Assembly (NCBI GenBank): GCA_002269645.1
Contig: NIVC01000070.1
Coordinates: 62,001-126,000 of the forward strand
Reading direction: 5' to 3'
Length of the DNA stretch: 64,000 nt
Source of the DNA: Macrostomum lignano
Taxonomy: Eukaryota
Shown: in pieces, positions 1,007-56,679 of the stretch
Layout of the letters: each line of letters starts with the position of its first letter
Position numbering within the stretch: the stretch's first letter is position 1
Notes under the pieces: generated by a model
Told to the model about the DNA's origin: nothing
What the model saw: only the letters and a program-made list of their open reading frames with translations
Databases searched by the model: none
Made by a program: the position numbers and the translations under genes

Positions 1007-11869
<10,863 letters not shown>

Positions 11870-18259: not shown

Positions 18260-18540
18260 TCAGCGCTCATTTTGGTGCCACAGGCACTCATTTTGGCGCC
18301 GCAAACACTCCTTTAGGGCGGCGCAGGCACTCTTGTTGGCGCCGCAGGCATTCCTTTTAGCGCCGCAGGCACTCCTTTTGGCGCCGCAGGCACTCATTTT
18401 GGCGCTGCAGGCACTCATTTTGGCACCGCAAGCATTCCTTTTAGAGCCGCAGTCACGCCTTTTGGCGCCACAGGCACTCATTTGGGCGCCACAGGCACTC
18501 ATTTGGGCGCCACAGGCACTCCTTTGGGCGCCAAATGTGC
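18260..18540 (-). repeat. 21-bp minisatellite (tgcctgcggcgccaaaatgag)n
   Basis: Same unit family as inside the TIR element at 56768-57328 and at about 54025-54060. Confidence 0.9.
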
Positions 18541-19799: not shown

Positions 19800-20453
19800 T
19801 TATCTCAAAAGCCACATGCCGGAAAAAGAGATTCCAGTTAGCAGGGTTGGTGACATCACACCTGCAATTTGCAAGCAGCGCTTTAGTTACAGAACTCAGC
19901 GCTCAAGTCGCTGAGTAACCAATTCTACTTACTTAATCCGGGAACCGCTGTCGAGTTTTGGTTCGATAGACGAGCAGTTTCCAAATGGCAACGGGTTCCT
20001 GCATTTATTCAATCGATTTTTAAGACCAATTTTCTACTAAACAGAGGAAGTGCTACTGTTTCAGATATATTACCTGTATAACGGCCTGTACAGCTACAGG
20101 TAAAGTACGGATCGGTGTACGCCAGAGTGCAGGTGCCGCCATTCTGGCACACAGGCAGCTCAGTGATGCCCTTGTCAGGCTGCAGGGTGAAGCAGTAGTC
20201 TGCAGCTGATTCGCAGTACGGTGCAATGTAGGGCAGCGGGCAGAGGCAGGGTGGACTGTTTGTGAAGTTGTTGCAGGTGCCGCCGTTGTAGCAGGTGACT
20301 GTTGAGCAGTTCACAGCCTCAGTTTGAGCTGAAACGAGGTTGTTTAAAGACTGAAGTTCTTACAAGATTTCCTGCAAACCTTTATTGTTGACGATTTCTG
20401 GGACTCTGTCACTCACCTATTAGTGACAGTAGAATGCAAGCCATTGCCATCAT
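19800..20453 (-). CDS. EGF-EGF cluster gene g1: signal peptide, 2 EGF-like domains, short stalk, GPI-anchor-like C-terminus
   Basis: Exons 20453-20417 (MMAMACILLSLI), 20328-20074 (EGF-EGF), 19998-19933 (GTRC...VPGL), 19861-19800 (SVMSPTLLTGISFSGMWLLR*); all GT-AG, phase 1. Confidence 0.78.
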
Positions 20454-21368
20454 TGATGCTTCTCCGCGCAAAGAGTGACTCACGTATCCTTTACTGTGTA
20501 AACCGTACTTGTTGTCCTTCTCAGTGAATACTCGCACACTGAACCTTTTGTATTTGGAATTCTGCGATATTAGCAGCATCCTTCACGTAAAAGTAGGTAG
20601 CTAAGCAAGCGTTCTTTTAATTACTGCTATTGAATATTTCAAGATCCTTCTTTAGGATTCTGATTGAGAAGCACTGATTTATTTCCCAGCTTAGCTGTCT
20701 CCTTCTCTCTAGTGTACTTTCTTACCTTGACTTCTTCTTACCCTTATCAACTCTCTCACTGCACTTCAATGGTGCGTTCATTTGGTCATTCAGCCAACAC
20801 TTCATTTCACTTCGTCTCTTCTCTCCTCTCCCCACAGTGCACACTTCGCACTCAGTGCTTCTTTGATCCAAAACTTCCTTCTTTTCATGCTCACATTCGC
20901 CCCAATCTATCCCGGGAAACAACACCAGAGAATGAACATTGATACCTGAGTAGAGCTATTCTAGATCTACATAGAATTATGCAACATTTGAAATAATGTT
21001 TAATGCATGTAAATATTTCAGTTCTGTGACTATGCCTTGTATCCTGCACTTTCTGTCCAAAACAAGTAGCAACGAATGCAAAAAAGTGCTCGACTTAAAA
21101 TGAGAAACGCGATCCGTTTATTCAGTTGAATACAAGCGCAGAAAAACAACAAAATTAGTTTAGGTCTACAGTGTAAACAGACAAAAGCATTTTAGAGGCT
21201 TACTCATAACTTTATCTGACAAGTTGGCTAAAAAGGTCAGAAGATCATAATCAAATTTACCGCACAAATTTTGCACTATAAAATGCTGGATTTCGAATCC
21301 AGACCCAAATATGCAGTAGATAAGAACTTGAAAGTTTATTAATTTAGGTACATCTGTCTGAAACATTC

Positions 21369-22780
21369 TCAAGATACTTTAAAGGCTTTGGTACACCAAG
21401 CGATGCCGTCCACTTTGACAATCAGCCCATCAAACTTGTGGTAATTATCACAGCCGATGTCGATACTCTGAAATAGAGGGTTTGAATTCAAAACTGTTTC
21501 AATGTTAAGAGAATCGATGTTATCAATGGTTCGATCAGTTTTCTTAAATCTGTGGTATTTTTTAAATCCCAAAAGCAGAACACCTGCACTTTATGAGGAT
21601 ACAACCAATTAAACAGATCTTGATTACAAAACGCAAAAAATGCGAGATCGCTTCTCACCTTATAGCAGCAGCTGATTTCAAAACTGCCAATTCCAAATAG
21701 TAAATGCTAGTACAACCTGAGCAGCAGAACGAATGTCGCACCGATAGCCACTGTTTGCCGACACAAATCTGAGGAAGTTCAGGAGTGTTCGGAATTTCTT
21801 AATCGAGCTAACCAGTTTTAATTTGCACCAATAAATTTTTTCAACTCTATTCGTTTTAAGTCCACCTACACCCTGCAGCATTAACACGGTTAGATCAAGG
21901 CATTTTAAAAACCTTTTCTTTACGGCCTACATAAAGACTAAAAAGATTTTATTTCAAAATCATAAATAGTAATCCCACCGGTTGCAGTGTCGGCAGCATT
22001 TTCTAAGTCTAGTTCTGTCGTTGTTGGTAGTGCAGTCTCAGTTGTAGCAGTCGATGTCGGTGCCGTTATCCCAGCTGTAGCAGTTGATGTTGGTACTGAT
22101 GTCCCAGCTGTAGCAGTCGATGTCGGTGCCGTTGTCCCAGCTGTAGCAGTCGATGTCGGTGCTGATGTCCCAGCTGTAGCAGTCGATGTCTGTGCTGATG
22201 TCCCAGCTGTAGCAGTCGATGTCGGTGCTGATGTCGATTGACTCGAAGTAGTGTCATCAGAGGTTGTCACGGTTTCGTTGCAACGATTTCCTGAAAAATT
22301 CGTTCATAAAAAATTTGCATTAGAATGAAACATTTGCTAATATTTCAACCTAACTAATACAAACCTGTGTACTCAGGTGGGCAGGTGCAATTGAAATAGG
22401 GATCAGTATAGGTCAGAGTGCAGTTGCCGTCATTCAGGCACACAGGCAGCTCAGTGATGCCCTTGTCAGGCTGCAGGGTGAAGCAGTAGTCTGCAGCTGA
22501 TTCGCAGTACGGTGCGATGTAGGGCAGCGGGCAGAGGCAGGGTGGACTGTCTGTGAAGTTGTTGCAGGTGCCGCCGTTGTAGCAGGTGACTGTTGAGCAG
22601 TTCGCAGCTTGTGATGGCGCTGCGAATGAATTAGTAAGAAAATAGAGTCTTACAAATAAGGCTGAATGGTTGCATGAATAAATGTACTAATTAATAAAAT
22701 CGCAGCAGAATCTGAACATGCTTACCAGCTAAATATAGAAAAAGTAGACATACTTTAGTCCCATTGGAAACAGTGGACAT
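21369..22780 (-). CDS. EGF-EGF cluster gene g2: signal peptide, 2 EGF, Thr-rich stalk (33-bp repeats), TM, cytoplasmic tail with NPLF
   Basis: Exons 22780-22726, 22619-22365, 22290-21979, 21768-21717, 21588-21369. TM VAIGATFVLLLSAGVLLLGF followed by KKYHRFKK. The last two exons are less certain. Confidence 0.72.
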
Positions 22781-23223
22781 AACTGACTTGACTCGTATTG
22801 TCCAGAGAATAGCAATTGAAAACGCAGGAACTTTGTTATAACCAGAAAACACAAGCTATTTGGAATCGCTTAAAATGAAATCCGGATATCTATATGTACT
22901 GTTTTAGTGTACTGGTAGCTACACGATTTTTCATCTCTTTTGGTTATTGGCTACAGTCTGGTTTTGCGCGTTAATCCTGTATAAAACGGAAAGCATTCAA
23001 TGCGCATGTCTTACTGGCTTGAGTAGTAAATCAATACATAAAACAATAGAGATCAGATGCAATGAAAATAGAATGTCTTGCCGAATTTCGGATTTTTAGA
23101 AAATGGTAAAAAAAGCATCTAGCGCGTGTGCTTAGTAGCCAATTGGTGATACGAACGCAGATCATGTACTAGATCAAATCACGGGAGTCCATCGAGCAAG
23201 TTGCTATTAGAGCTTGAAGCAAA

Positions 23224-25073
<1,850 letters not shown>

Positions 25074-25464
25074 GCTTTACATGTACTACCAGTTTTTACC
25101 CTAGATATTTTTCATAAAGGAACAAACGTTGGTACGTCGTTATGTTTTGGCGGAATGGGTACGAAAAAATTGAAATAAAGCTCGTTAAATTCTCAACCAA
25201 CTCTACCTTACTTTCCTAATCTCGTTTACTATTTTTCTCTATTTCTTATATTGTGGCATCCTTCTTAAAAAATAGACGTTTTGTCAATAGACACTTCATC
25301 CTGAGTCACACTGTACGTGCCGTTCTAAAATTGTGCTTGATGCTGTCTATTATTACAGACTGCTCCATGAACTCTCTGCTGGCTCCGCATTGGATGAGCA
25401 ATAAACTAACAGGCTATTTTATCTTTTCTTTGCTGCGCAGCTGTACTTTAGCAGCGTTGATGCT

Positions 25465-25466
<2 letters not shown>

Positions 25467-25505
<39 letters not shown>
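25467..25505. repeat. (GA)n microsatellite
   Basis: Direct. Confidence 0.95.
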
Positions 25506-25507
<2 letters not shown>

Positions 25508-25849
25508 TAAGAAAAAGAATTGCAGGCATAGCAGGTACGCTCTAGTAAACAAGACCCGCTGTGCAGGGATCTGTCGAATCGACGTCCATTAGCCCGGAAA
25601 AGGCTCGACATCGAATCGACGGCAAACACACACTCCTCGAGTCGACGGCGATCGGCACAGCGGGGACACACTTGGTAGCATCGGACCAACGGGATTACAG
25701 AAAAAATAATGACTTAATTTTGGCTCAGTGTTTTTTGAAGACTCGAGTGTTTATGACATAATTGACAAGGGTAAGAAATCGTCAAGCCGTAAAAGAGGTC
25801 ACTGATCAGCTCACTGGAAAACTGGTCTGACGACCCCCCAACTACGACA

Positions 25850-26030
25850 CAGAGAGTGTACAGTGTACATGCCTGACGATTAGAAAGTCAGGACCGGTGT
25901 ACACCCTATGTGAGCTTGCGTGTGCATGAGTGCGTGCCTGCGTACAGTATTGGCGCGCTTGCATGTGCTCAAGAGTCAGCGGAATGGGCAGAATTGGCTC
26001 AGCGCTGCTTGTGGCAAGGGTGTCCTCAAT
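25850..26030 (+). mobile_element. Decayed 3' part of SINE family B
   Basis: Similar to 58480-58660 (tgtacatgcctgacgat...cggaatgggcag...cgctgcttgtgg). Confidence 0.55.
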
Positions 26031-26636
26031 CAGAATTTTAAGCAATGCAGACCTAGAACATGCACGCGTCATTGGGTCTCTTGGTTTCGATTAATTTCCA
26101 TCGATATTGTAGTCTGGTTAAGACTGGATTAAAATAACTGCTGTAGAAACTTACAAGAGTGATTCAAGTACAATACCTCAGATTTTTTAAGTTTTCATTT
26201 ATATACCGTATGCACATTTAAAATGGATAGGCTCGTGACTTTAACCATGCCTTGGAACCTCTTACCAAAATGATCTGTTCTTTACCAACTACTCAATGCT
26301 TGCATTTGCTTTAAAGAAAAGCAGTCTCGAGTCGCTTTTGAATGATATCTGTACGTTAAATTTGCTTTGTTTCTGAGACGTTTATTCTAAAGAAAATTCA
26401 GGTAAGAAATCAGTCCGAAGGGCTTTTTAGCGACAGTAAAATCAAAGTCAGAAAGAGGAGACCGTTTATTGATTTTGTCCACGGTCGACCCTGCCTCACG
26501 GGTTCGCCAAGCCAGACTGAGTACTCTGTGCAGTACTTCGATTGCATTACATTATTTTAAAAAAAACTCAAAATCCACATAAAGTCAATCGCGACAGAGT
26601 TTTACTGATTTTTCAGCTGAAGCAGCGCCAGCAGCA

Positions 26637-27645
26637 TCAGCACCCGCAGCCGCGTGACTTTGCGTTCTGTTCCCCTTCAGGGTCTGTAACCTTCTGTAAC
26701 AGTAAGAGGTGAGATGATGCTAGCTAATAAATGGAAGAAAAAGACAATCGCAAATTTTCATTCTCAAAACTCACCTCAGTTCTTCCGGCTGGGTAAATAT
26801 AGAGAAAAAAGCTGCCGATGATGATGAACAGGACAGGTGCGCACACACCAATCACTACCTTGCTGGTTGTAGTCAGGCCGCTGTCTTGAGGAGATTAGGA
26901 ATAAGGAGCATGACATGAGCTTTTCAACTTTAAAAAATTGAAAATGGCAATTTTTTTTATTTTATGGCACAATTGATTACCGCAATCGTAGAGGCAGTAG
27001 GTTGGATTCGTTGGATCGTTGGATTCTGCATTCCAAACTTTATCACTACATCTGGTGCCTTAGTAAGAGGTGAAAGAGTTTAAAGAAATTTTTAATGGAG
27101 ATTTTGTGCATTAACCGAATTTTGCAATAAGAAAATATTTAAAAAAGGTTTTACCAGTATAACCGGTAGGGCAGCTGCAGTTAAAGTACGGATCGGTGTA
27201 AGTCAGAGTGCAGTTGCCGTCATTCAGGCACACAGGCAGCTCATTGATGCCCTTGTCAGGTTGCAGGGTGAAGCAGTAGTCTGCAGCAGATCGGCAGTAC
27301 GGTGCGATGTAGGGCAGCGGGCAGAGACAGGGCGGGCTGTCTGTGTAGTTGTTGCAGGTGCCGCCGTTGTCGCAGGTGACAGTTGAGCAGTTCGCTGCCT
27401 GAGTTGGTGCTGCAAATTTTATCATCTTCATTTTTTGGCAAGCTTTTATCACACAGTAACTGTGAAAATTCAGTTAGTTGCAGCAATGCTTTTCTACGAA
27501 TGTGAAAGAAGTGAAATTCAAGAATTCGATTGTTTTATTCTGCAAAGAAGTATTATGAAGAAGCTGCTTGGCTTAACTTACCAATTGCAAAAGATGATAA
27601 AACATGCAGACTGCCGGCAATGCGAATTAACTGCAGTGCTGTCAT
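26637..27645 (-). CDS. EGF-EGF cluster gene g4: signal peptide, 2 EGF, short Cys-containing stalk, TM, short tail ending GCGC*
   Basis: Exons 27645-27582, 27409-27155, 27058-26981, 26884-26775 (TM VVIGVCAPVLFIIIGSFFLYIY), 26693-26637. Confidence 0.8.
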
Positions 27646-28339
27646 TTTCAATTCTTTGGAAAAGACGGCTTAAGCTCAGATAAAAATGGTGCGAATCCCT
27701 GTAATGTAATTTTATTCTTCTTGAACTACGAGTATGCAGTACGAGTACCTGCGAGCTTGTAGACTGTCGCACTTTCGCTCAACCCAAAATGAAACAGTTT
27801 TTCTGTGTGAGCAAGCTCTTTATGAGCATACCGTATATCTGAGCTGCAGACTGTTTTTTCTATGAATACAATTGCAAAAAGACGAAAAAAATGGACGAAT
27901 ATGCAGCAGGAATGTATAGCGATGCTTGCCGTATTAAAATGTACGCGAGTTACATTTTTTCTCGAGAACATCATTGTGCTCTTGCGAATTCATCTGCGTC
28001 TCCACGATTTTGCTTCGGAAACTTCTTTCTCTTTGATGCTCACTAAATTTCTCTGACCGCGAGACCCCCCCCCCCAACAAAAACTTAAAACCTTTTCAGC
28101 TCGAAAGTCACTGGCATGAATTTTACTGTTATGATACAGTCTAGAAAATTGATTTTGGCCATAAATGGACTCACCTTAGCAAATGTATATCTGGTATTTG
28201 CAAGTATGAGTATAATGCAGCGTGCTGGGGTGGAACTATCATTTTTTGTCTGTTGCAATGCGTACCAGAGCTTTTTCTTTGAAATCTACATCGGTTCGAA
28301 ACTTTACCTCGGTGGCAACTCTAAAAATTGCTTCTCTTC

Positions 28340-28670
28340 TCTATGGTAGTTGTGGAGCTCCTACCCAACCGCCAGAGGTCGGTGGTCGATACCCTACTGC
28401 TCTACAAAGCCAAGATGTTGACACTGACGGACCTGGATCTGCTTACATGATCGGCGATGAGCGAGATACTTTTGCGCCATTCCATCACCCCGCCGGCCTG
28501 GTCCGTTCAAAGTGACATTTTGTGCTTTCCAGTAATTCAAGCTGGCAGGGCACATCATCCGCGCTGAATTGTACTGCCCACATCCGGTGCGTAAGGTGCT
28601 GCTGCTGATTATGCAGGCACCCTACCGACGCCGACAGACTGGCGCCGGCGTCTTGAATTCGGTCGTAGCC
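28340..28670 (+). mobile_element. Degenerate 3' remnant of a non-LTR (RTE-like) retrotransposon
   Basis: One frame reads KLAGHIIRAELYCPHPVRKVLLL..Q.PYRR, typical of the C-terminus after the LINE RT domain; stops and frameshifts present. Confidence 0.5.
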
Positions 28671-29253
28671 TAGCCTAAAAGTCGTGACAATTCTGCTTCA
28701 GTATTTCTGAATACCTAAACTATCTGCGTATTTTTGTTGCTGTTTGCCTTCGGCATTTACTAGAAGTTCCGAAAAACGTTTACCTTAGCATCTTTATGAG
28801 ATTAAAGTAATCGTTTAGCTGGATACCATCTTTATCATTCAGCGTTTCTATGCTTGGAGCCACCATGGCACAAATTTCGGTACTACAGGTGACGCAGGGT
28901 TTCCTGGGGAGTCTTGAAAAAGTCCTTGATGTCGCGAACATACGAATGGGTAGTTTAATGAGCTAATTGGTTTCTATTAAGATTACTATTGTAGTGAGTT
29001 GCAAGTGTACATATATGCGCTAGTCGCTAGAGCTGAGTTAGGGGGGTTGCTTGTAATACACCAGGGTTTACAGATAAAGCAGAGAATATCATGGATAAAA
29101 TACCAAACTGTGTATTTATTTTATTTTATTTTATGAAGGCGAATATATGCATGGTAAATTATAGAAAAACAATCTAGACAAATTTTGAATAGGAAACATG
29201 TGTTGCTAGCGTATTGTAGCAGTCTTCACCACGTTGTCATCAAAAGTGGATTA

Positions 29254-32013
29254 CTAATAAAGTTGCGATGAGCTGCTCGGACTTCCATATACGTAGTGTG
29301 ACCATGGCATGTTCTCTTGAATCTGAAAGCAAAAAAAGAAAAAGGTTTAGTTCTTGAACCAAAAAGAGAAATATATATTTATAATATAAATTACCCTGGG
29401 CTGCCGTGGAGCCGTGGAACTATTCATTGACACAAAATTGTATATCGCAGCGATAAACAGGGTGACCGTCACCAACACTAACGGAAGAAAAACGCTGACA
29501 ATCATCAGCCCGATGTCCTCCCTCATGGTTGATGCTTTGATGCCTAGAGAAGTGTGAGTTTGGAATTATTATTCAGCGCTGAGCGTCATCTGAACTACTA
29601 GGGGGGACGATTGTCTCTCATGACAGTTTGACAACGTGACAAGTACAGTGTACCATAATAATACGTTATACTGCATCATTTAACCCATTAAAAATCCTAA
29701 ATGTCTTTTAATAATAGGCATAAATGCCAGCTAGATAGTTTGATACAGAACCCCCAGTTCTATCTAACCGATTTCAACAGGTAGGGAAAACTGTAGTAGC
29801 ATATAAAAATCCTTTCATTACCAAACGAATCGGCTGCAGGCAAGAAATGTCACGAAAATAAACTGGGTTTGATTTAGGCACTATTTCCCCTAACTTTATG
29901 CCAGTATCAGCATCATACATCTGTTGAAAGACTTACTTCTTGGTCTGGCCGTTGACATGACAACTTTTGAAGTAGGCGAATCACTTGTAGAACTAGTAAT
30001 TGTTGATTGAGTCGTCGCTTCTGACCACGACGATGTTGACTCAACTACCGGAGGCATTGACTCGGTGCTAACTGACGGCACCATGGTTGCTGTTGAAGTC
30101 GGAGGGGCTGTTGTTGAATCTTTAACTACTGTCGTTGAATGTGATGTAAGGTCTGTCAGTGGAACCGGTGTTGTATAAGAATTCGCGATTGATGCTGTCG
30201 ATGCCGCAGTCGCTGGGGAAAGAGTCGGCATTTCAGAACTCTCGCTTGTAGACGCAAGTGTTGAAGAAATCACTGGAGACGTCGAAACTGCTTGAACCGT
30301 TGAAGCGGTGCTATACACAGGTGACTCTACGGTGGTTGATTTTAATTGAGTCGGTATTGATGAAAAATCTGTGGCTGATTCTGTCGTTGCTGAAACAGTT
30401 GGCAGGGCAGTAGATGCAGACTGAGCAGGAGTTGCTAGAGCAGATGTAGTTGCATCAGGTGTTGTTGAAGCAGCTGTTGCATCAGTTGTTGCATCAGGTG
30501 TTGTTGAAGCTGCTGTTGCATCAGTTGTTGCATCAGGTGTTGTTGAAGCTGCTGTTGCATCAGTTGTTGCATCAGGTGTTGTTGAAGCTGCTGTTGCATC
30601 AGTTGTTGCATCAGGTGTTGTTGAAGCTGCTGTTGCATCAGTTGTTGCATCAGGTGTTGTTGAAGCTGCTGTTGCATCAGTTGTTGCATCAGGTGTTGTT
30701 GAAGCTGCTGTTGCATCAGTTGTTGCATCAGGTGTTGTTGAAGCTGCTGTTGCATCAGTTGTTGCATCAGGTGTTGTTGAAGCTGCTGTTGCATCAGTTG
30801 TTGCATCAGGTGTTGTTGAAGCTGCTGTTGCATCAGTTGTTGCATCAGGTGTTGTTGAAGCTGCTGTTGCATCAGTTGTTGCATCAGGTGTTGTTGCACC
30901 AGGTGTTGTTGCACCAGGTGTTGAAACATCAGGTGCTGTTGCACCAGGTGTTGAAACATCAGCTGCTGTTGCACCAGGTGTTAAAACATCAGGTGTTGTT
31001 GCACCAGGTGTTGAATCAGCAAGTGTTGTTGCACTAGGTGTTGAATCATCAGGTGTTGTTGTACCAGGCGTCAAAGCAAAAGTTGTCGCGAGATCAAGTG
31101 TTAGTGAAACAGGTGTTAGTGCATCAGGTGTTGATGGAGCAGTTGCTATTTCACCAGGTGTTGAATCATCAGATGTTGAGGCATCAGATGTTCCTAGAAA
31201 AGCTGTTGTTGCATCAGGTGTTGCTGCACCAGGTGTTTGATAATCAGATGTTGTTTCAGCAGGTGTTAAAATATCGCTCGTTGAGGCTTCTGTTGTTGCT
31301 GATAAAGATGATGATGTCTCATTAGCTGAGTCTCCAGCAGCTACAGTGCCCGTGTATGGGTTAGTCGCTGTTTCAGTGTTGATTGTTGTTTCAATTGTTG
31401 AATTATCAATTTCACAGCGCGGACCTGAAAACCGTAAATATGAAATTACGAGCCGTATATATTTTAATGCTTTGATTTCGAGTTCACGTACAGAGTATGA
31501 CCGAAACTCGTTTTGGTCATACTCAAAACTACATGAGCAGCTAAAGGTGTAATCCAGTGTACAAGTAAGATAGAAAAGCATATGTAATGTTTCTCGATAC
31601 AAAATATTTCAACCGAACCTGTGGACTCAGGTGGGCAGGTGCAATTGAAATAGGGATCAGTATAGGTCAGAGTGCAGTTGCCGTCATTCAGGCACACAGG
31701 CAGCTCAGTGATGTTCTTGTCAGGCTGCAGGGTGAAGCAGTAGTCTGCTGCTGATTCGCAGTAAGGTGCGATGTAGGGCAGCGGGCAGAGGCAGGGCGGG
31801 CTGTCTGTGAAGTTGTTGCAGGTGCCGCCGTTGAAGCAGGTGATTGCTGAGCAGTTGGCAGCTTGTGATGCTGCTGCAATCAGTTGAATAGGGTTTTACT
31901 TGTCTATTAAAGTGGAATGCCAAAAGAGTGATCAGAAAGTTTTTTCAAAAGGCCTCACTTGAGCAGAAAGTCAACATGACGGTCAGTGCTATGCAGAGTT
32001 TTGCCGCAGCCAT
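29254..32013 (-). CDS. EGF-EGF cluster gene g5: signal peptide, 2 EGF, about 500-aa mucin stalk, TM, short Tyr-containing tail
   Basis: Exons 32013-31959 (MAAAKLCIALTVMLTFCS), 31873-31619, 31424-29937 (mucin, about 11 x TTPDATTDATAAS), 29543-29395 (TM), 29322-29254 (...YVYGSPSSSSQLY*). Confidence 0.85.
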
Positions 32014-33895
32014 TGTTAATCTAGTATGAGCCTTCGCGCAGCAAAAATATAAGTAGCTGGCAAATAGCCAGGTCTTGCTTACATTCTCTTTTTGAGTAGG
32101 AAAATTGCATTGCACGAACTGCAGAAAATGGCTACTATTTTTGTATTCTTTAACGAGCGCATAGCCTAGTTGGCTGGCACAATGGCAGGTGCAGAGTTGA
32201 AATACCAGGATAAGAATCTCATAAGTAGGGCTGGGTGCACACATTCTCGCTTTTACTCGAGACACAAATCCGCAAGGCTAGGGCTCGGTCTGGGTTTTCA
32301 GTCGAACAGAATGCAGTACTTTGTACGCACGCATAGGTTTGCCAACTCAGCTACTAAAAAGATGCCGAACTCGTGAATAATAAGTAGACTCGTTGTGGCT
32401 GAGCATGGACAACAAACCTGAAGTTCGCTAAACTCCAGCAAAATACATTAGCGGGATCGGAAGTTTTCATTTTTTCGTACTACGAAGCTACGAGCTAACT
32501 TTCACTGTCTCACTGTCTGGACTTTCGACTAAATGAATAAAGCATGCGTGTTGTTACAATTTTGTCGAGAAAATGTTTGAAATATTATGATTAAACATTT
32601 GTGTTTTCTAAAAGGAGTTCGCAAGGATTCGATGTTTTGCAAAGCAACTAAAAGTACACTGAAGAGACAGCAGCAGTTGAATTTCGCGGGAACTTGTGCA
32701 CTTCGAGTGGGAAACATACCTGTTTTGTTTAGAATTCGGAGGTCCAGTGCTGATATACTGAGAATTAAGTCAAGTTTATGAATTAATTTTTAATCATTGA
32801 TGTAAAATCCTTTCCAAAGCACTCAAAACAAAGAAGTTCTTGAAAGAAGAAGCAAATAATTTCAAGCAATCTGGCAGGCATATTATTGCAACATGACCCT
32901 TTCATCTTCTTTGTAATCTTTGAATCGTTTTTCATTGTTTCTCGAGACTTCCTGCGAGCTGAGACTTGAATTTAACGCCATGATTAGTCTGTTCAGGACT
33001 TCTGTCACGAAAAATGCTTCATTTAGAGGTTAGATGAGGTGACAAAGACAGCAACAACAGAACGTGAAGGACAGCGACTACAAGGAATCAGCCACCTGGC
33101 ACGACGAATAGTATATTTTGCATCAGGTGTTAAAAGTTGTGAGAAATACAAGAAATACGAGAATACAACTTGAGCAGTTAAGCGAAATCGCTAATAAAGC
33201 ACAACTTGGGGGCTTAAAAGCCAAGCGCCGTGCAACAACCTCCTATAACGCCAACGTGACCCGGCACGAGGGATCTGTAGCCACACTTTTGAGCAGGTGC
33301 GCTGTCTCTTTGGAGAGTTCAAGACGTCATACCAACAACAGCTTTGATTCGATCACTATATTGGTGTCGAATCATATATCATGGAACATATACAGAGTCA
33401 TGATGTCATCGGTACATACTAGATTAATTATGAAACAAAAAGTCACGGTGTTAGATAAGTTACGGGTAACATTTATTGTTCTTCTACTAATTATAGTCAC
33501 ATGCAAGGACTACTAGACTATCTAGAACGAAGTGTTCCTAGTGGTCCTTGTATACATGTAGGGTAGCGATTAAAATAAATTGAATATATCACAGGAAATT
33601 TGTTATAATATGGAAAATTATTCAAAAAATGGAAAACTTTTTCATTAATTGGAATAAAAAATGAGTCAATTATTTACAAAGAGTTCAATGTGAAGCGATT
33701 TTCAACTAAAAAACTTCATATGTGACGTTCGGTCAAAAATAAAACCTAAAAAAAAGTACAGTAAATAAAAATTGTACTAAATTTTTACTTCTTTTAGTTC
33801 AGACCGGAGAGAAGAAGAAAGTGTACCGTTACAAGCAAGAATAACAACGTATGCAGGATGTAATCCATAAGACAATATGTAAGTAGTTGAATAAG

Positions 33896-36800
33896 TTAAA
33901 AGACATAGGGTATTTTCGCTCTCTTCTGGGGCATTGCGTAGACAACTTCCGCATCTGGCTGATTGTTTTTCTCGGACTCAGGTATTTTCGCTTTCTTCTG
34001 GACCACTGCGTAGACAGCTTCCGCATCTGGCGGATTGTTTTCCTCGGACACAGGAGTTCTGCCACCTGGGCTGCCACCAGCTTCCGTGTCACCGAGAGAT
34101 GTGCCATTGGTTGCTTGGCTGTTAAGTTCGACAGCTTTTGAGTTGTCATTCGGCTGATATTTATTTTCAGTTTCATCAATAATTTCGGTTCCTGTATTCG
34201 GACAGTGAGATTTTGCCGTTGAATCGGCAGTTTCATCCGTAACTGTTGTGCTACTTGGAGCTTCCGACTGCTTCTTGCAAATTGTTTTGCGCTTGCAAAC
34301 TACTACAATGATTACTATTATAAATACGCCTCCGACCGTGCCGCCAGCAGCTGCGACGCCTACAGTGACGGAAGCCTTGGAAAATCCAAGTGCTGAAATT
34401 ACAAAAAAACAGTAGCTATTATTTTTGCCACAATAGAAGATTTTTTTAATTTGAGTTTCATCGAGACACTTACTGTCGTCTTCTTTGTGTCTCTCGTTGC
34501 ATCGAAAGCCTAGAATATTAGTGAATACGGCTTGTAAAACTGATTGTGAAGTTTTAGAGTATCTAAACATATTAAAGCGCAATGCATGTTATACCTTAGT
34601 AATAATAATAATACTAATAATAGATTACACCTGCATTGATGGGCAGATGTGCAACCGACAGCTCAGCCGCAGCTATTGCGCGGCGCATCTGAAGGCTGCG
34701 TACGGCTGTTCAGTCCAAGGACTGGGGGGGGGGGGTCGGCACACAAACCCTCAATTACCCCCAGCTAATAATGCTGGTAACTATTTTGCAGCTGGGTGAA
34801 CCCCAAGACACCCGGATTGCGATGAAATTGGGAATATTGCAATAAAATTGAAATAATTGCCGTAATTGCAATTTTATTTCCCTAAAATTAGTTAAATTGC
34901 AATTCACTTGTGCAAGTCACTTGTAATTATTGCAATTCTACTAAATGCTTTACTCTCTACTTACAGTAGAATACTTAGAATATTAAATTGGACGAATTGC
35001 AATTTGATTGTGAACTTTAACTGTTTTATAATTTTGTGTTAGCGATAAAGGAAATGAGCCAATAACTACAGTTTGGTTAGCCATATTTTGTAAAGATTTG
35101 TTTTAGCATCATTTTAAGGAAAATGTTTATAGTTTGTTTAAGCGATGTATTAAGATTTGCTTTGAGCAAAAATGCTGCAAAATGTCCGCCATGTTTTCTA
35201 TAATCATAAGTTAGCCATACCTAGCCTGAAGTATAGGCTGTATAGCTCTCCATACTTGACTTGTTGTAATAGTTATGAACTCGTCATAATTATAATCAGC
35301 ATTAATTAAAAGGCTAAGCCTGTAAAAGCTAACCAAATAATTATTCTAATAATATTAATTTAGTGCTTTTAATTTCAGTTTCAGTAGCCTAGCCCCTATT
35401 TTATTGTAGGCCTAAGCCTAGTCTTGTGTTGTGCCTCTGTTGTGTGATATGATGACATTTACATTATAAGTATAATCTACATCATAGAGTTGGCCTATTA
35501 TATATAGACTATAGATTGGATAGAGAGGTGGCATGTAAGGCTGGCCCTATAAGATATTACCTGTAAATTTAATGTAACCTAGTTGGCTATGGTAGCAGGC
35601 TTGTGTTGTGTCTTTGTGTTCTGTTGTGTTTTCTTCTAAAAAAAACTAGCAAAGGCCTATTGCTTTGTGATAGTAGCCAAGTGGGTAGGGTAGGTCTAAA
35701 TTGACTTTATTGTATAATAATAATAATGCTGCAAAAAGTGCAAAAATATTCTTATTATTATTATTATTATTGGAATATTAGCAATTAGCTAATTTATTTA
35801 GACAATATGAGCAATTATTAATTGGAATATTGAGGAGCAGGCCTTGGCTATGTGAAGCCTAATATTTAAAAAAAGCAATTGCTTTTTATATTTATAACTA
35901 GCAATCTTTGCCCCCCGATGGGGGACATCTGGATAGAATCCTTGTTCTTTACAAATAACAAATAGACAGCGAAATAAAGCCTTCAGAAAAAACAACAGAC
36001 ATTCCCTCTTAAAAACAAAACATCCCAAGACAGCAAGCATCCTCAGACAATATTCAAGCATTGATCCCCAAATAGCAAGCATCCCCCAGACTGCAAGCAT
36101 CCCCCAGATAGCAAGCATCCCGCAGATAGCAAGCATCCCGCAGATAGCAAGTATCCCCCAGATAGCAAGCATTCCTCAGATAGCAAGCATCCCCCAGATC
36201 GCAAGTATCCCCAGATAGCAAGCATTCCCCCAGACCCCAGATAGCAAGCGTCCCCCAGATAGCAAGCATCCCGCAGATAGCAAGCATCCCCCAGATAGCA
36301 AGCATCCCCCCCAGATAGCAAGCATCCCCCAGATCGCAAGCATCCCCCAGACAGCAAGCAACCCCTGATAGCAAGCATAACCTGGATACAAAGAGACCTT
36401 ATAGATATCTAGCAACCCCCTCTCAGATAGCAAGTACTCTCCACCCCCAAGAGCAAGCATCCCCCTGATAGCAAGTATCCATCCTTAAATAGCAAGCATC
36501 CACCAGAGAACAAGTAGCAAGTGCAACAATTTCCTTAGCTTTATAATGGTTTCCATTTTGTTTGGCATGACACTTCTTTTATGTTTGAAATGGTGTCTCT
36601 TTTTTGTTTAAAAAAGTGGCTCTTTAATGTTTGACATGGTAGCTCTTTTGTGTTTGACATGATAGCTCTTTAATGTTTGACGTGGTGGCCCTTTTGTGTT
36701 TGACATGATAGCTCTTTAATGTTTGACATGGTGGCTCTTCTATGTTTGGCATGGTAGCTCTTTAATGTTGACATGGTGGCTCTTCTATGTTTGACATGGT

Positions 36801-39800: not shown

Positions 39801-42209
39801 TTAAAAAATTCTGCACCAAAGCAAGGTTTAGCCATAAATAAAATTGTCCAGTTGAATTTCTGCTAGTTTTTTAGAACTGGACTTTGATCAAAATTGAATG
39901 TAAAAAGGTATAATAACCAAATATTGTCTTATATAGTATATATTATAGTTTAAACTAAGAATTTTTATGCTGGTTACATGACCTTTACTAAGTAAGTTAG
40001 TCTAAAGATAAAAGTCCTTAGCCTATTTCTATATTTTAGTTTTGAGTTATAAAATTGGATTTTAACTATACTCAAATAAGAATCATTAAATTAAGTTTAA
40101 CTAATTACAAAGCCTAGTAGAGCCAAACTAGAAGTAAATTTGATCATTGGCCCCTAATCTATACTATAGAATAAGTCTAATGATAATGGTAAGTTATCTT
40201 GGTTATTGCATAAATTTTGTAATACTATTAGTAAATAGATCAGCCTAGACCTAGTTAGGAATTATATGCTTGATGACTTTAATATATAGCCAAGGGCAAA
40301 AGGTAATGTCATTGCTAAGTCATTTACTATGTAGCCTTATTTTAGAATGAGTTTTAAATAGGCATATGATTAATATGTTCTTTTCTTTTACCTATCTCTA
40401 ATAACAAAACTATTTTAATTTTTCCAGCTCAACAGACCAGCAAAGGAGCAGCAGCCCATCCAGGGTCCTAAGGAAGCAAGGAAGAACCAATGGCCCAATT
40501 TATTGCTACAAAAACAGACCAGCTCAACAGACTGATTTATTTATTGCTGCAAAAACGTATTTCCTCACCATAATCCTAAAATGCATTAGCTCTAATTAAT
40601 TCATTAAAATATAAATAGTATCTTGAGTCTTGCTAAAAATGTTGTCAATTTAATGTTTTGTTGAAGTGGTTGTTTGCAATTGGCATAAGTTGGTTTTGTT
40701 TTCTGAACTTGTTTGTTATTTTCTAATGGGCAAGTGTGTATTTATGTGTATGAGGGAATCAATTAACTGAGTACTCTACTCTCCTATGAAACAAAAATCA
40801 ATGCAGTATACTAATTGTATGTATTACTAGTAGTAGCAAGATAAAAAGCGAAATTATAATCAGAATTGCTTAAGCAAATTGTAATTTGATTGCCAATCCT
40901 CTTGTGCTAATTACAATTTAATTGTCACAATTGCAATCTAATTGTAATCTGCTTGTCGAGATTGCAATTTAATTATAATTTGCTTATCAAGATTGACAAT
41001 CAATTGCCAATTAATTTGCAATAATTGCCCAATTTTGCAAATTCAATTGTAATTAATGCGCAATTATCACTATTTTGGGCGTCTTGGGACTGAAGCAATG
41101 CAGAGTTAAGTGTTTTGCTCAAGGACACAAATTGTTCCAGTGGGATCGGGAATCGAACCCCCACCTTCAAGTTGAGTCCGACGCTCTAACCACTAGGCTA
41201 CAACCCCTAGGTATACCCTAGTGTATACCAACTTGTTTGATAAGATACACTAGCAGAATAGAACTTGTTATCCAGCGCAGTGCTTTTTATGTGCCAGTGG
41301 CCCGGCTCGATTCAAAATGCAGTCTAAGCTAATGCACTGATTTGGGACTAAATTGGAATCTCGACTTGGCTCTGCTCGTGCAATTAGCGCTCTTGAGGGC
41401 CAACACCCAAAGCACAGTGAAGCGTACATGCTTAACGATAAATAAAGTTAGAGCCACTGAACACTCGTGTGAGTGTTGCCTGTGCGTATGACTGCGTACG
41501 TATCCACGCGCTTGTGTGCCTGCTCAGGGGAATCGGTGGAATGGGCAGCAATGCCTCTGGCCGGTTGTGTGACAATGTCGCTTAAAGTGCGCCAGGGTGC
41601 ACACTCCGCTCTGCCTCTTAACTTATGACAAAACTATGCAAACATTTGGTCATGTACTGTTAAGGTACAGATCTGTAAGCTCAATTCACTCAGCCCACTA
41701 TACTAACTATCCATATATTCTAGTATACGTAGAAGAAGCAAATAGAAGCCTTTTTTTATCAAAGAGATCGGCTTGATTTTACCTTCGTAGCCATCAGGAC
41801 AGCTGCAGGAAAAGAACGGATCGGTGTATGTCATAGTGCAGTTGCCGCCATTCTTGCATACAGACAGCTTATTGATGCCCTTGTCAGGCTGCAGGGTGAA
41901 GCAGTAGTCTGCAGCTGATTCGCAGTACGGTGCGATGTAGGGCAGCACGCAGAGGCAGGGCGGGCTCTCTGTGTAGTTGTTGCAGGTGCCACCATTGTAG
42001 CAGGTAACTGCTGAGCAGTTAGCAGCTTCGACATTGTCTAAGATGCGTTAATTATGATAATATGTGGTTTTCAACATGATTAGTCAGAATATCTCGAATA
42101 ATCATTATTTTCTGATGTACAAAAAAATTAAAAATGCATTGAAAATTTGAATTTCTTCGTGATTCTTACCGAATGCAGTTAGGAGAGTGAAGAAAATGAG
42201 TAGCAACAT
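33896..42209 (-). CDS. EGF-EGF cluster gene g6: signal peptide, 2 EGF, very short stalk, TM, long tail with two Tyr motifs; 7.3-kb transposon-filled intron
   Basis: Exons 42209-42170 (MLLLIFFTLLTAF), 42037-41783, 34509-34474 (GFRCNERHKEDD), 34392-33896 (TM, KRK, tail with AVYAVVQK and VVYAMPQK). Confidence 0.78.
34600..34801 (-). mobile_element. 3' half of a family-A CORE SINE interrupted by the CMC-like element
   Basis: Reverse complement aligns with 17951-18135. Confidence 0.85.
36060..36500. repeat. 18-19-bp minisatellite (gatagcaagcatccccca)n
   Basis: Direct; internal to the CMC-like element. Confidence 0.93.
36615..38770. repeat. 23-bp minisatellite (ttatgtttgacatggtggctctt)n with higher-order duplications (about 368-bp and about 300-bp blocks)
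   Basis: Direct; ORFs 37174..37416 and 37542..37784 are near-identical at an offset of 368. Confidence 0.95.
38834..38896 (-). pseudogene. tRNA-like fragment or SINE head (A-box, GCT loop, B-box, downstream T-run)
   Basis: Minus strand TAGCCAAGATG...CTGGA CTGCTAA TGTAG...CTGGG TTCGAAT CTTAG; no acceptor stem, so not a functional tRNA. Confidence 0.45.
39671..39910. mobile_element. Older copy of the 224-bp MITE
   Basis: caccttttcatgatcaattttgatcaaaatccaattctaaaaaactagcag... with an inverted end; homologous to 42732-42955. Confidence 0.7.
41089..41207 (-). mobile_element. 5' half (tRNA head + CORE start) of the interrupted family-A SINE
   Basis: GGGGTTGTAGCCTAGTGG (A-box)...GGTTCGATTCC (B-box)...gtgtccttgagcaaaacacttaactctgcattgcttcagt. 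Confidence 0.85.
41290..41625 (+). mobile_element. SINE family B, diverged 5'-truncated copy
   Basis: Aligns to 58360-58670. Confidence 0.8.
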
Positions 42210-51093: not shown

Positions 51094-52735
51094 TCAGATT
51101 GCATGAGAATTGAAGTCTGATTCGCAGCCCTCCTCCCAGACGTATCTGGTCCTGTCGCCGCTTCGAGAGGTCTGAAATCATTTGAGAATTGTATTTTACT
51201 TAGCAAATATTGTATAAATATAACCTCTCAAATATTCTCTTGGAGACTTTTTGGGATCAAATCAGTATTTTTAAAAAATCATTTGAAACTCATATCGTTA
51301 CGTATACTATATGATGTGAATATTTAAACAAACTCTATTTATTTTGGCCTGATGAATATGCGCAGACATTGTCAAGACATCACAACAAAAGTTTAAACTG
51401 AAATATGTTGATAATAGAATGCGCTAGTTTCTATTTCGCATAAATATTTCTCAATAAAAGCTTCAAAAAAGTCAGAAAAAACAACCATTTTTTTCGAAAT
51501 TCTGCAAAGCGATGCGGTAGAAGTGTTAAAAATCGGATGAAGCTGCGCAATTTTTTCTCCATTTGTCTCTTTTTAGCCTAAAAGTCTGGCAAAATGACTG
51601 CATTGCAGCATGCAAGCTATGCGAGAATTACCACACAGGAAATAACATTCTATTGTAGAACTCATTCCAGCCTCTTTCAGGCTCATAATAACAAGTACAA
51701 GCAAGGTTTTTTACCTTCTGGCGATTGCGACAACGAGCAGCAAAAACGATGGCAGCCGCTATGGCAGCAATTATCACCACGGCGATTGGGACTCCAACAC
51801 TGACGGATATGAGTAACACAACTCCCATCGTTTCATGCCAACCGGATGTAGTCAGGTCTGCAGAATATTTAATTGAATGTCACTTAAAAGTGCAGTTAAA
51901 TCTGCCTAATATTTTTTCATGAACAAGCAATGATCTTTATCAACTCACTTGCAACGCTAGTGCTGACTACTTCGGTAGATTTTGTTTCGGTTGAAAAGTT
52001 CGGGCTTGTTCCGCCGTCAGATGGTAGCGTAGTAGCTTCCGGTATTGGTTCCGCATGCTCGCAACGTAGCCCTGAATTTCGGAGATTTCTTACATTAACC
52101 TAAACAATTTGACTGAAATCATGCTAATTAATTGATTACCATAAAAGCCAGGTAAGCAAGAGCAGTTAAAATATGGGTCAGCGTAAGTCAGCGTGCAGTT
52201 GCCGTCATTCAGGCACACAGGCAGCTCAGTGATGCCCTTGTCAGGCTGCAGGGTGAAGCAGTAGTCTGCGGCAACACGGCAATATGGTGCAATGTAGGGC
52301 AGCGGACAGAGGCAGGGCGGGCTGTCTGTGAAGTTGTTGCAGGTGCCACCGTTGTAGCAAACTGCGGAGCTGCATGTCGCCCGTTTCTGTCTTGAAAGTG
52401 CGCTGAACTCGTCTGCAGCTACTGAGGAAGCTGAAATACAGAGTTCAGAGTAGGACTAGGGCTTAGATAGATGTTTTGCGCACAGCAATTGACATGTATA
52501 CAATTATTGCGTGCATCTTAGCCAAGATATAGTGCCCTTCTACAACGTACATTTCCCTTTATAAGTGTGTTTTTTCGACTTTCCTTTAGCAAGAACCTCA
52601 GGCCTTTGAAATCCTTTCAGGGTACCAAAGTCACTGAGCTCTGTGTGTACGAGCCTATGTCAGTAAATACGCTCGTAACGTAATATACTTACCGACAATA
52701 AATAAGGATAGAATCAGAAGCTGATATGAGTACAT
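51094..52735 (-). CDS. EGF-EGF cluster gene g7: signal peptide, short pro-segment ending RQKR, 2 EGF, stalk, TM; tail exons uncertain
   Basis: Exons 52735-52693 (MYSYQLLILSLFIV), 52430-52140, 52071-51949, 51857-51715 (TM). The tail is either 51649-51617 (NVISCVVILA*) or 51649-51632 + 51171-51094. Confidence 0.75.
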
Positions 52736-56319: not shown

Positions 56320-56679
56320 TTTTTTATTAGAGGCAGGGGGGTTGTGTGCACCCTGGCGCACTTTAAGCGACATAGGCACACAACCGGCGAGAGGCATTAC
56401 TGCCCATTCTGCCGACTCCCCTGAGCAGGCATACAAGCGCGCGGATACGTACGCAGGCACACACTCACACAGGAGTGTACAGCGGCCCTAACTTTATTTT
56501 ATCGTTAGGCATGTACACTTCACTGCGCCTTGGGGGTTGGCTCTCAAGGCCGTTAATTGCACGAGCAGAGCCAAGCCGAGATTCCAATTCAGCCCCAAAT
56601 TAATGTGACTGCACTTGGAATCGAGCCTGGGTCTCTGGCACACCAGAGCAGCTGCGCTACCGCTGGGCTACGGCCCCCC
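56320..56679 (-). mobile_element. tRNA-derived SINE family B, full-length young copy
   Basis: A-box TAGCCCAGCGG, B-box GGCTCGATTCC, AATAAA/A tail, 14-bp TSD ttccttctctactc (56306-56319 and 56680-56693). Confidence 0.9.

What the first reader, a model, noticed from the sequence alone, without database searches (positions are those of the whole stretch)
20146..31713. Mosaic, exon-restricted sequence identity suggests gene conversion of the EGF exon
Seen: g1 and g2 differ at only 2 of about 167 nt over 20146-20312 but diverge at the exon 3' end. There g2 instead shares an identical 89-nt tract with g5 (22371-22459 vs 31625-31713). g3 and g4 share a different 3' end (gggcagctgcagttaaagtacggatcggtgtaagtcagag). 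Flanking introns and other exons show little similarity, and the EGF exon is visibly more GC-rich than the genes' other exons. Identity at synonymous sites next to unalignable flanks is hard to explain by purifying selection alone. Inference: ongoing ectopic conversion keeps the head homogeneous.
Basis: partly seen in the sequence, partly recalled or inferred. Interest (0 to 1): 0.7.

Follow-up and report, generated by a model that had tools for sequence, protein, structure and literature searches.

The report
Gene conversion homogenises flatworm EGF exon
A tandem family of small EGF-mucin membrane-protein genes in the flatworm Macrostomum lignano shares only one alignable exon, and patches of that exon have been copied between the genes (gene conversion); this is a clear new example of a well-known process.

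Summary
g1/g2 differ at 2 of 167 nt, g2/g5 share an exact 89-nt tract, and g3/g4 share a 40-mer. Similarity stops within a few bases of the splice sites. The window (M. lignano Mlig_3_7, contig NIVC01000070.1) holds seven minus-strand genes, not five. Each has a signal-peptide exon, a phase 1-1 EGF exon, a Ser/Thr stalk, a TM segment (identified in four genes here, and in models for others) and a tail.

Recombination among the exon copies is significant: PHI P=0.0002, MaxChi g1/g2 P=0.0005, and head and tail trees conflict at 92-99% bootstrap. g1/g2 dS is about 0-0.04 in the head and about 2 in the tail.

Two further copies of the cluster in the same assembly, probably the other subgenomes, have collinear and alignable introns. 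Their EGF exons nevertheless carry patches that match other paralogues. One motif sits in g3 in two clusters and in g6 in the third. One g4 copy is a g4/g5/g1 mosaic. g4 A-B shows 9/252 exon differences against 0/394 in the adjoining intron.

GC3 is 0.70 in this exon against mostly 0.16-0.54 in the other exons, but GC bias in recent events is not shown. Exon-restricted concerted evolution is well known, so this is a new member of a known kind. Validation against raw reads is still needed.

The parts
20074..20328 (-). g1 EGF exon (255 nt, phase 1-1; EGF1 plus the first five Cys of EGF2)
   Evidence: Acceptor ...TTTCAG| and donor |GTAATA read; translation; Pfam EGF hits
20146..20312 (-). Conversion patch in g1: 167 nt, 2 differences from g2 22437-22603, bounded by mismatches at 20145 and 20313
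   Evidence: MaxChi P=0.0005; triplet P=0.0002. g1-locus proteins P0003/P0004 from elsewhere in M. lignano carry a g3-type head instead
20417..20453 (-). g1 signal-peptide exon (MMAMACILLSLI, phase-1 donor GTGAGT)
   Evidence: the same exon is present in cluster C
19928..19998 (-). g1 exon 3, starting G-T-R-C (sixth Cys of EGF2)
   Evidence: 22/22 aa match to P0004 read in another frame
21707..22780 (-). g2 whole gene (227-aa model P0007): SP exon 22726-22780, EGF exon 22365-22619, stalk exon from 22290
   Evidence: the NCBI gene call at L001 10001-11074 maps to window 22780-21707
22371..22459 (-). 89-nt tract identical to g5 31625-31713
   Evidence: Sawyer-type global P=0.017
24485..24742 (-). 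g3 EGF exon (model P0009; SP exon 25001-25073, exon 3 from 24374, TM exon about 23487-23810)
27155..27409 (-). g4 EGF exon (SP exon 27582-27645, exon 3 from 27058, TM exon 26727-26894)
   Evidence: the NCBI 187-aa gene at L001 5136-6144 maps to window 27645-26637
31619..31873 (-). g5 EGF exon (SP exon 31959-32013; 1.5-kb Thr/Ser/Pro/Ala-rich stalk exon 31424 to about 29896; TM exon about 29350-29565)
41783..42037 (-). g6 EGF exon (SP exon 42170-42239; exons 3-4 far downstream at 34510-33899 behind a 7.3-kb intron)
52140..52430 (-). g7 EGF exon (291 nt, 12 extra 5' codons; SP exon 52693-52735; exon 3 from 52071; TM exon 51631-51879)
   Evidence: P0010
24499..24538 (-). 40-mer shared exactly with g4 27169-27208 (the g3/g4 tail type)

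Best explanation
The window carries a tandem cluster of seven old paralogous genes from Macrostomum lignano. They encode small type-I membrane proteins: signal peptide, two EGF-like domains, a Ser/Thr-rich stalk of very variable length, a TM helix and a short tail. The genes arose by whole-gene duplication long ago. Their introns and other exons are now unalignable, and the 3' third of the EGF exon is saturated at synonymous sites between types. The EGF exon of about 255 nt is the only remaining island of homology. Repeated short-tract non-allelic (ectopic) gene conversion between the copies keeps its centre nearly identical and produces mosaics. Tracts run from tens of nt up to about 170-250 nt. 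Conversion needs homology on both sides, so tracts lie inside the exon. The exon edges (the 17-nt leader and the last ~70 nt) therefore escape more often and stay gene-specific. Shown here: the mosaic structure, statistical recombination, tree incongruence, and differences between subgenome copies that match paralogue states. Inferred: the DNA-repair mechanism (SDSA-type repair templated by a neighbouring paralogue), the g2-to-g1 direction, and a contribution of GC-biased repair to the high GC3.
For: (1) Mosaic: g1/g2 have 2 differences in nt 1-166 and 23 in nt 167-237, with dS about 0-0.04 vs about 2.0. g2/g5 have 9 then 1. (2) Tests: PHI P=0.0002 for all copies; 0.005 without g1; 0.024 without g1 and g2; 0.015 at third codon positions only. 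MaxChi g1/g2 P=0.0005, Rmin=8, triplet P=0.0002, g2/g5 run global P=0.017. (3) Head and tail NJ trees conflict at 92-99% bootstrap. (4) Paralogous intron flanks score like shuffled sequence. Orthologous introns in clusters B (L002) and C (L003) are 86-100% identical. The paralogues therefore far predate the subgenome split, which is about 2% SNP divergence genome-wide (PMC10733133). (5) Since that split, CCTTACTGCTCAGCTGCT sits in g3 of clusters A and C but in g6 of B, and CCGTACTGCGAATCAGCT sits in g6 of A but in g3 of B. C_g4 has g4 ends plus a g5-type AAGAAC and a g1-type CAGAATGGCGGCACC. g4 A-B has 9/252 exon differences vs 0/394 in the upstream intron (Fisher P=0.0002). B_g6 is nearest to g3, not to A_g6. 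At 42 of 78 ortholog-difference sites both states exist in paralogues, against 19% expected (P=4e-12). (6) Between g6 orthologues the EGF exon is the most diverged coding part, about 81% aa against 94-96% for the SP and exons 3-4. (7) All genes share intron positions and phases, and EGF2's sixth Cys lies in the next exon. This points to whole-gene duplication, not exon insertion. (8) GC3 gradient: 0.70-0.85 in the head, 0.54-0.62 in the tail, mostly 0.16-0.54 in other exons. (9) Precedent: concerted evolution restricted to coding sequence, with undetectable non-coding homology, in yeast WGD pairs (PMC3924837). Mean NAGC tract of about 250 bp and GC bias in humans (10.1101/135152).
Against: No raw reads were examined, so mis-polishing of near-identical exons cannot be excluded. 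This applies especially to the g1 patch, which is seen only in this assembly. Mlig_3_7 has many chimeric scaffolds, although S/L chimerism cannot create paralogue mosaics inside a 250-nt exon. Within the head alone there are too few informative sites to detect recombination (PHI P=0.2). Purifying selection on the protein, and possibly on synonymous sites, may therefore contribute to the invariant core. Recent derived changes show no significant GC bias. Donor and recipient, and the non-reciprocity of transfer, are not established.
Confidence: 0.85

Rival explanations
1. Purifying selection alone, including selection on synonymous sites (codon usage, splicing enhancers or an RNA element), keeps the head of the exon conserved. 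The paralogues evolve independently.
For: 51 of 79 codons encode an invariant amino acid in all seven copies. In codons 21-55, 20 of 28 invariant-aa degenerate codons are nucleotide-identical in all seven. PHI within the head alone is not significant. Selection certainly acts on the Cys scaffold.
Against: Selection cannot produce supported tree conflict between head and tail. It cannot place multi-base motifs in different genes in different subgenomes. It cannot make an exon more diverged than its adjoining intron between orthologues (g4 A-B 9/252 vs 0/394; g6 13.1% vs about 11%). PHI is significant at third positions alone (P=0.015).
Confidence: 0.05
2. Assembly or polishing artefact: reads from near-identical exons were mis-assigned during consensus calling or short-read polishing, which created false 'converted' patches.
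For: M. lignano is a neopolyploid and Mlig_3_7 is known to be error-prone and partly chimeric (PMC10733133). The g1 g2-type head is seen only in this contig. B_g3 has a 1-nt deletion that could be a consensus error.
Against: The g2 and g3 exons are identical in two separately assembled contigs (A and C). UniProt M. lignano proteins match two L002/L003 exon variants exactly at protein level: P0002 equals the C_g4 mosaic over the 77 aa from STVTC onward, and P0005 equals B_g4's EGF2 part. I believe these proteins derive from the earlier ML2 assembly (own knowledge, not checked here). Patches have sharp borders, sit next to unique intron sequence that long reads would span, and are many and different.
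Confidence: 0.07
3. Recent exon shuffling: a mobile phase 1-1 EGF exon was recently inserted into unrelated genes, so only the exon is similar.
For: The exon is symmetric phase 1-1, the classic shuffling class. Family members exist with other N-terminal parts, such as CUB in P0014.
Against: All seven genes have the same architecture and the same intron positions. EGF2 is split so that its sixth Cys (G-x-R-C) is in the next exon of every gene. The tail of the exon is saturated between types, with dS up to about 2. Shuffling does not explain internal mosaics or differences between subgenomes.
Confidence: 0.03

Closest known systems
Concerted evolution restricted to coding sequence in old duplicates (yeast WGD pairs, as reviewed by Fawcett & Innan 2011, PMC3924837)
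   Same: Paralogues whose non-coding DNA has lost all detectable homology while the coding sequence stays similar through recurrent conversion. Purifying selection preserves the homology that conversion needs.
   Different: Here the island is a single exon of about 255 nt in a seven-gene tandem array of an animal. Only the centre of that exon is homogenised, and the rest of each coding sequence has diverged beyond alignment.
Non-allelic gene conversion in human/primate duplicates (Harpak et al. 2017, bioRxiv 10.1101/135152)
   Same: Short tracts (mean about 250 bp in that study), elevated GC in converted regions, and a rate that falls as divergence grows until sequences 'escape'. The divergent tail and leader here look like escaped segments.
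   Different: The human cases were mapped in introns of young duplicates. Here the introns escaped long ago. GC bias of individual events is not demonstrated here.
Exon-focused patchwork conversion in MHC class I/II and similar receptor families (own knowledge, not tested here)
   Same: Short patches exchanged among tandem paralogues create mosaic alleles within one domain-encoding exon.
   Different: No evidence here for diversifying selection or an immune role. The net effect in the head is homogenisation rather than maintained polymorphism.
Notch-type EGF repeats and small EGF-mucin-TM proteins
   Same: Six-Cys EGF fold signature. The best PDB sequence matches are Notch1 EGF repeats (E 5e-6). 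Pfam EGF (PF00008) scores above its gathering threshold in the full-length models P0007 and P0009. EGF1 has the O-fucose consensus C2-x4-T-C3.
   Different: The module with its conserved inter-EGF linker was recognised only in proteins identical or near-identical to M. lignano sequences. The origin of most library hits is unknown, and so is the function.

Membership tests
Interlocus (non-allelic) gene conversion / concerted evolution | Mosaic tracts of near-identity between paralogues, flanked by divergent sequence | tested here: met
   g1/g2: 2/167 then 23/71. g2/g5: 89-nt identity. Triplet P=0.0002
Interlocus (non-allelic) gene conversion / concerted evolution | Statistically supported recombination signal and incongruent segment trees | tested here: met
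   PHI P=0.0002; MaxChi P=0.0005; head vs tail bootstrap 92-99% for conflicting splits
Interlocus (non-allelic) gene conversion / concerted evolution | Orthology, as defined by flanks, violated inside the converted segment | tested here: met
   B_g6 is nearest to g3. C_g4 and B_g3 are nearest to each other. Motif swap between g3 and g6 across clusters. Introns collinear at 86-100%
Interlocus (non-allelic) gene conversion / concerted evolution | Non-reciprocal transfer (donor unchanged) and known direction | tested here: inconclusive
   g2-to-g1 is favoured because g2's head type is shared with its sister g5 and g1-locus proteins elsewhere have another head. No outgroup is available to polarise it.
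GC-biased gene conversion | Excess of W>S over S>W among converted sites | tested here: inconclusive
   Putative converted sites: W>S 11, S>W 8. Point changes: 2 vs 5. The GC3 gradient of 0.70-0.85 / 0.54-0.62 / 0.16-0.54 is only suggestive
EGF-like domain (Pfam PF00008 / PF07974) | Six-cysteine pattern and a Pfam score above the gathering threshold | tested here: met
   P0009 25.5 bits and P0007 22.1 bits against a cut-off of 21.5. The exon alone scores below the cut-off because EGF2's sixth Cys is in the next exon
Exon shuffling of a mobile phase 1-1 module | The same exon inserted into otherwise unrelated gene contexts | tested here: not met
   All seven genes share architecture, intron phases and the split of EGF2 across intron 2
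Assembly collapse / polishing artefact | Mosaic not supported by spanning raw reads | not testable with these tools
   No read data available. Partial counter-evidence from UniProt proteins that I believe come from the ML2 assembly, and from identical exons in separate contigs

The most novel reading that the evidence does not exclude
Conversion here may be more than a homogenising by-product. It could act as a combinatorial shuffler of a handful of variable surface residues on a fixed EGF scaffold (F/Y, D/N/A/V/E, ES/SA/RS/RV, G/N, T/S/N, L/Q/K, D/G/N, N/T). That would generate receptor or adhesion-protein diversity across three subgenomes, in the manner of MHC or antigen-variation families, in a flatworm surface-protein family of unknown function.
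Probability: 0.1. Interest if true: 0.6.

Novelty: new member of a known kind. Interest (0 to 1): 0.4.

Why it matters
The case is unusually clean. A single short exon remains the only homology island in a seven-gene tandem array. Three recently separated subgenome copies in one inbred line act as a built-in time marker, because they differ by only about 2% genome-wide. This allows conversion events to be counted: at least five or six patches in 16 exons since the duplication. Tract lengths and edge effects can be measured, and GC bias can be tested in a spiralian, a group for which I found no such report in a two-term full-text search. It is also a practical warning for annotation and orthology calling in M. 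lignano, where EGF-exon trees will mislead. It does not reveal a new mechanism.

Tried and rejected
(1) The look-up of encoding contigs for P0003, a g1-locus protein with a different head: not on record, so no DNA for the g1 equivalent. Cluster C's g1 EGF exon lies beyond an insertion of more than 7 kb, outside the fetched flank. (2) The look-up of P0007 only returned the window's own contig. (3) PHI within the head only: too few informative sites, P=0.2. (4) MaxChi for g2/g5 alone (P=0.087) and g3/g4 alone (P=0.18) is not significant. Those pairs are similar along the whole exon, so their similarity is itself the signal only when set against the unalignable introns. (5) dS for 'other exons' could not be computed, because SP, stalk and TM exons are unalignable between paralogues apart from the G-x-R-C start of exon 3. 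(6) The GC-bias test on polarised changes is not significant. (7) A full-text search for 'Macrostomum lignano' plus 'gene conversion' listed seven papers (eight held both terms); by title and abstract none concerns this family or gene conversion in M. lignano. (8) Exon-shuffling and selection-only readings were rejected for the reasons given under rivals. (9) The weak PDB match to the mussel adhesive Pvfp-5 (E 0.0016) was not pursued. It is a generic EGF-pair resemblance.
Full report
OBSERVATION. Window 20146-20312 and 22437-22603 differ at 2 of 167 positions (20225 and 20260). 22371-22459 is identical to 31625-31713, an 89-nt run bounded by a mismatch on each side. The quoted 40-mer occurs exactly at 24499 and 27169. 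A blastn of the exon against the window finds seven copies, not five. The extra ones are at about 41.8 kb and 52.2 kb. All align without gaps.

WHAT THE SEQUENCE IS. The exon reads on the minus strand. It is a symmetric phase 1-1 exon of 255 nt (258 in g3, 291 in g7). It encodes EGF1 and the first five cysteines of EGF2. Each copy has its own short hydrophobic signal-peptide exon 85-300 nt upstream, ending in phase 1 with a GT donor. The next exon always begins G-x-R-C, which supplies the sixth Cys of EGF2. It continues into a Ser/Thr/Pro/Ala-rich stalk that ranges from a few residues to about 500 (g5). A TM-helix exon and a short tail follow; I located the TM exon in g3, g4, g5 and g7.

These models were later confirmed by full-length proteins in the representative library. 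P0007 is g2 exactly, P0009 is g3 exactly, P0010 is close to g7, and P0011 is a g6 homeologue. Gene calls in NCBI assembly GCA_002269645.1 also agree. L001 is 100% identical to window 11707-32780, so the window comes from Macrostomum lignano Mlig_3_7, contig NIVC01000070.1. Pfam recognises only generic EGF domains, and the best PDB sequence matches are Notch1 EGF repeats. Function is unknown.

EXON-RESTRICTED SIMILARITY. Self-blastn shows that the EGF exon is the only DNA shared by all seven loci. For 300-nt intron flanks on either side, local alignment scores equal those of shuffled sequence (z about 0) in nearly all 21 pairs. Similarity ends within 3-4 nt of the splice sites. The shared intron positions and phases, and the split of EGF2 across intron 2, show that the genes arose by whole-gene duplication and not by insertion of a mobile exon.

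MOSAIC AND STATISTICS. Over 237 aligned nt there are 84 variable and 33 informative sites.

- g1/g2: 2 differences in nt 1-166 and 23 in nt 167-237. dS is about 0-0.04 in the first part and about 2.0 in the second.
- g2/g5: 9 differences, then 1.
- g3/g4: 15 differences spread evenly.

Adding the 17-nt leader shows that g2 is g5-like at both ends and g1-like only in the centre. This is an internal patch (triplet permutation P=0.0002). PHI gives P=0.0002. It stays significant without g1 (0.005), without g2 (0.003), without g1 and g2 (0.024), and at third codon positions alone (0.015). More than one event is therefore needed. MaxChi for g1/g2 gives P=0.0005 with a breakpoint at alignment position 167. 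Rmin is 8, and the g2/g5 run of 38 concordant variable sites has global P=0.017. NJ trees conflict: in the head (g1,g2) has 92% support; in the tail (g2,g5) has 99% and (g1,g3,g4,g6) has 95%.

INDEPENDENT COPIES OF THE CLUSTER. Looking up P0011 and P0009 returned two other contigs of the same assembly: L002 (NIVC01002128.1, 'B') and L003 (NIVC01001196.1, 'C'). Both are collinear with the window ('A') through genes, introns and intergenic DNA at 86-98% identity. According to Zadesenets et al. 2023, Mlig_3_7 contains three homeologous subgenomes (S, L1, L2) differing by about 1.9-2.4% in SNPs, and 36% of assembly length lies in chimeric scaffolds (PMC10733133). A, B and C are most simply these three copies.

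Orthologous introns align easily. Paralogous introns are unalignable because the paralogues are far older than the subgenome split, not because introns evolve unusually fast here. Against that background the EGF exons behave anomalously:

- g4 A-B: 0/394 differences in the upstream intron, 9/252 in the exon (Fisher P=0.0002), 10/399 downstream.
- g6 A-B: 13.1% in the exon against about 11% in the introns. At protein level the EGF exon is about 81% identical, while the signal peptide (22/23) and exons 3-4 (about 94%) are much closer.
- The motif CCTTACTGCTCAGCTGCT (Ser-Ala) is in g3 in A and C but in g6 in B. CCGTACTGCGAATCAGCT (Glu-Ser) is in g6 in A but in g3 in B.
- C_g4 has a g4 leader and tail but carries a g5-type AAGAAC and a g1-type CAGAATGGCGGCACC.
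- B_g5 differs from A_g5 and C_g5 at four sites, all changed to states common in other paralogues.
- B_g6's nearest exon is g3 (22 differences), not A_g6 (31). C_g4 and B_g3 are each other's nearest (12).

At 42 of 78 sites where orthologues differ, both states already exist in non-orthologous paralogues. The expectation for random point mutation is 19% (binomial P=4e-12). The test is conservative, because overwritten unique states count as 'novel'.

UniProt M. lignano fragments match these variants at protein level. I believe these fragments come from the older ML2 assembly, though I did not check this. P0002 equals the C_g4 mosaic over the 77 aa from STVTC onward. P0005 equals B_g4's EGF2 part. 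P0003 and P0004 are anchored to the g1 locus by 20/20 and 22/22 aa matches to unique downstream sequence (19862-19803 and 19997-19932). They carry a g1 tail but a g3-type head, whereas window g1 has a g2-type head. Since g2's head type is shared with its sister g5, g2-to-g1 is the more parsimonious direction for the window's 167-nt patch. This is an inference.

MECHANISM. The best-supported reading is recurrent short-tract non-allelic gene conversion among tandem paralogues, and possibly also between homeologous clusters. It is confined to the only homology island left. Tracts must be embedded in homology, so the exon centre is converted most often and the edges least often. That fits the observed gradient. 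In codons 21-55, 20 of 28 invariant-amino-acid degenerate codons are nucleotide-identical in all seven copies, against 3 of 10 in the tail. Between-type dS in the tail runs from 0.4 to above 2. Purifying selection on the EGF scaffold keeps the island similar enough for conversion to continue, which is the situation Fawcett & Innan describe for yeast WGD pairs (PMC3924837). The tract size (a 167-nt patch, plus shorter patches of 13-90 nt) is in line with the few-hundred-bp means reported elsewhere (10.1101/135152).

GC. The exon has GC 0.56 and GC3 0.70. The same genes' SP, stalk and TM exons have GC3 mostly between 0.16 and 0.54, and the introns have GC 0.34-0.47. Within the exon, GC3 falls from 0.70-0.85 in the head to 0.54-0.62 in the tail. 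This fits GC-biased conversion. However, changes polarised by the three subgenomes are not significantly biased (W>S 11 vs S>W 8), so gBGC remains a hypothesis.

RIVALS. Selection alone cannot give supported tree conflict, motif swaps between genes in different subgenomes, or exons more diverged than their adjoining introns. Exon shuffling is contradicted by the shared architecture and by the saturated tail. Assembly or polishing artefact is the one serious rival, because no reads could be examined. Three things count against it: the g2 and g3 exons are identical in separately assembled contigs A and C; two of the L002/L003 exon variants match UniProt proteins that I believe come from a separate assembly; and the patches are numerous, sharp-edged and adjacent to unique sequence.

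NOVELTY AND VERDICT. Exon- or coding-restricted concerted evolution by ectopic conversion is textbook, so this is a new member of a known kind. Its appeal is as a tidy natural experiment: a seven-gene array present in three subgenomes, a single short homology island, and visible edge effects. It sits in a spiralian model where I found no paper on gene conversion. It is also a caution for orthology inference in this family. Interest 0.4. Confidence that conversion is the main cause of the pattern: about 0.85.

Noticed in passing
window 43841-48348 (+): Ty3/gypsy-type LTR retrotransposon between g6 and g7. It has 181-nt LTRs that are 99.4% identical (43841-44021 and 48168-48348), a PR-RT-RNaseH ORF at 44022-47033 and an integrase ORF at 46646-47968, with GC 0.59-0.65. 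It is flanked by an inverted repeat at 43624-43804 / 48683-48867, so it may be nested in another repeat. It looks like a recent insertion.
   Followed up: partly
window 33899-41783: Intron 2 of g6 is about 7.3 kb in the window but only about 0.5 kb in cluster B (L002). It holds a 23-mer x96 array (36575-38791) and an 18-mer array (36066-36378). g6's exons 3-4 (34510-33899) remain open and are about 94% identical to P0011.
   Followed up: partly
L002 about 20825: The g3 EGF exon of cluster B has a 1-nt deletion near its 3' end that shifts the frame. This is either a pseudogene or a consensus error.
   Followed up: no
L003 14817 onward (= window 20354): In cluster C, g1's signal-peptide exon and the start of intron 1 are present. 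Collinearity then stops 26 nt before the EGF exon, and more than 7 kb of DNA unrelated to the window follows. This is probably an insertion.
   Followed up: partly
window 20354-34801 vs L002 and L003: Relationships among the three cluster copies change along the cluster. A is close to C around g2-g3 (0-1% divergence). A is close to B upstream of g4 and g5 (0-0.2%). A equals C in the g5 exon and downstream. This suggests homeologous exchange or recombination, or chimeric scaffolding of subgenomes.
   Followed up: no
window 41271-41618; 56323-56678; 58320-58679: A repeat of about 350 nt lies just downstream of g6's EGF exon. It recurs twice near 56-58 kb as an inverted pair that is 97% identical. 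It may be the termini of a transposable element.
   Followed up: no
window 3309-4747; 24001-24296; 54568-55688; 18266-18532 and 56873-57253: Very long microsatellites: (ATAG)~360, (ACAG)74 inside g3's intron, and (TGAC)~278. A 21-mer array is also present at two sites in opposite orientation.
   Followed up: no
EGF exon products, e.g. window 22365-22619 (-); g7 52140-52430 (-): EGF1 carries the O-fucosylation consensus C2-x4-T-C3 (CYNGGTC) and several N-x-S/T sites. g7 has a dibasic RQKR just before EGF1. There is a weak full-length PDB match to the mussel adhesive protein Pvfp-5 (7qab, E 0.0016).
   Followed up: no
proteins P0014, P0015, P0018 (not in window): The same two-EGF module occurs in other architectures. 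P0014 has CUB plus a Ser/Thr repeat region plus the module plus TM. P0018 is a 731-aa protein with additional EGF repeats. The family is therefore larger than this cluster.
   Followed up: no
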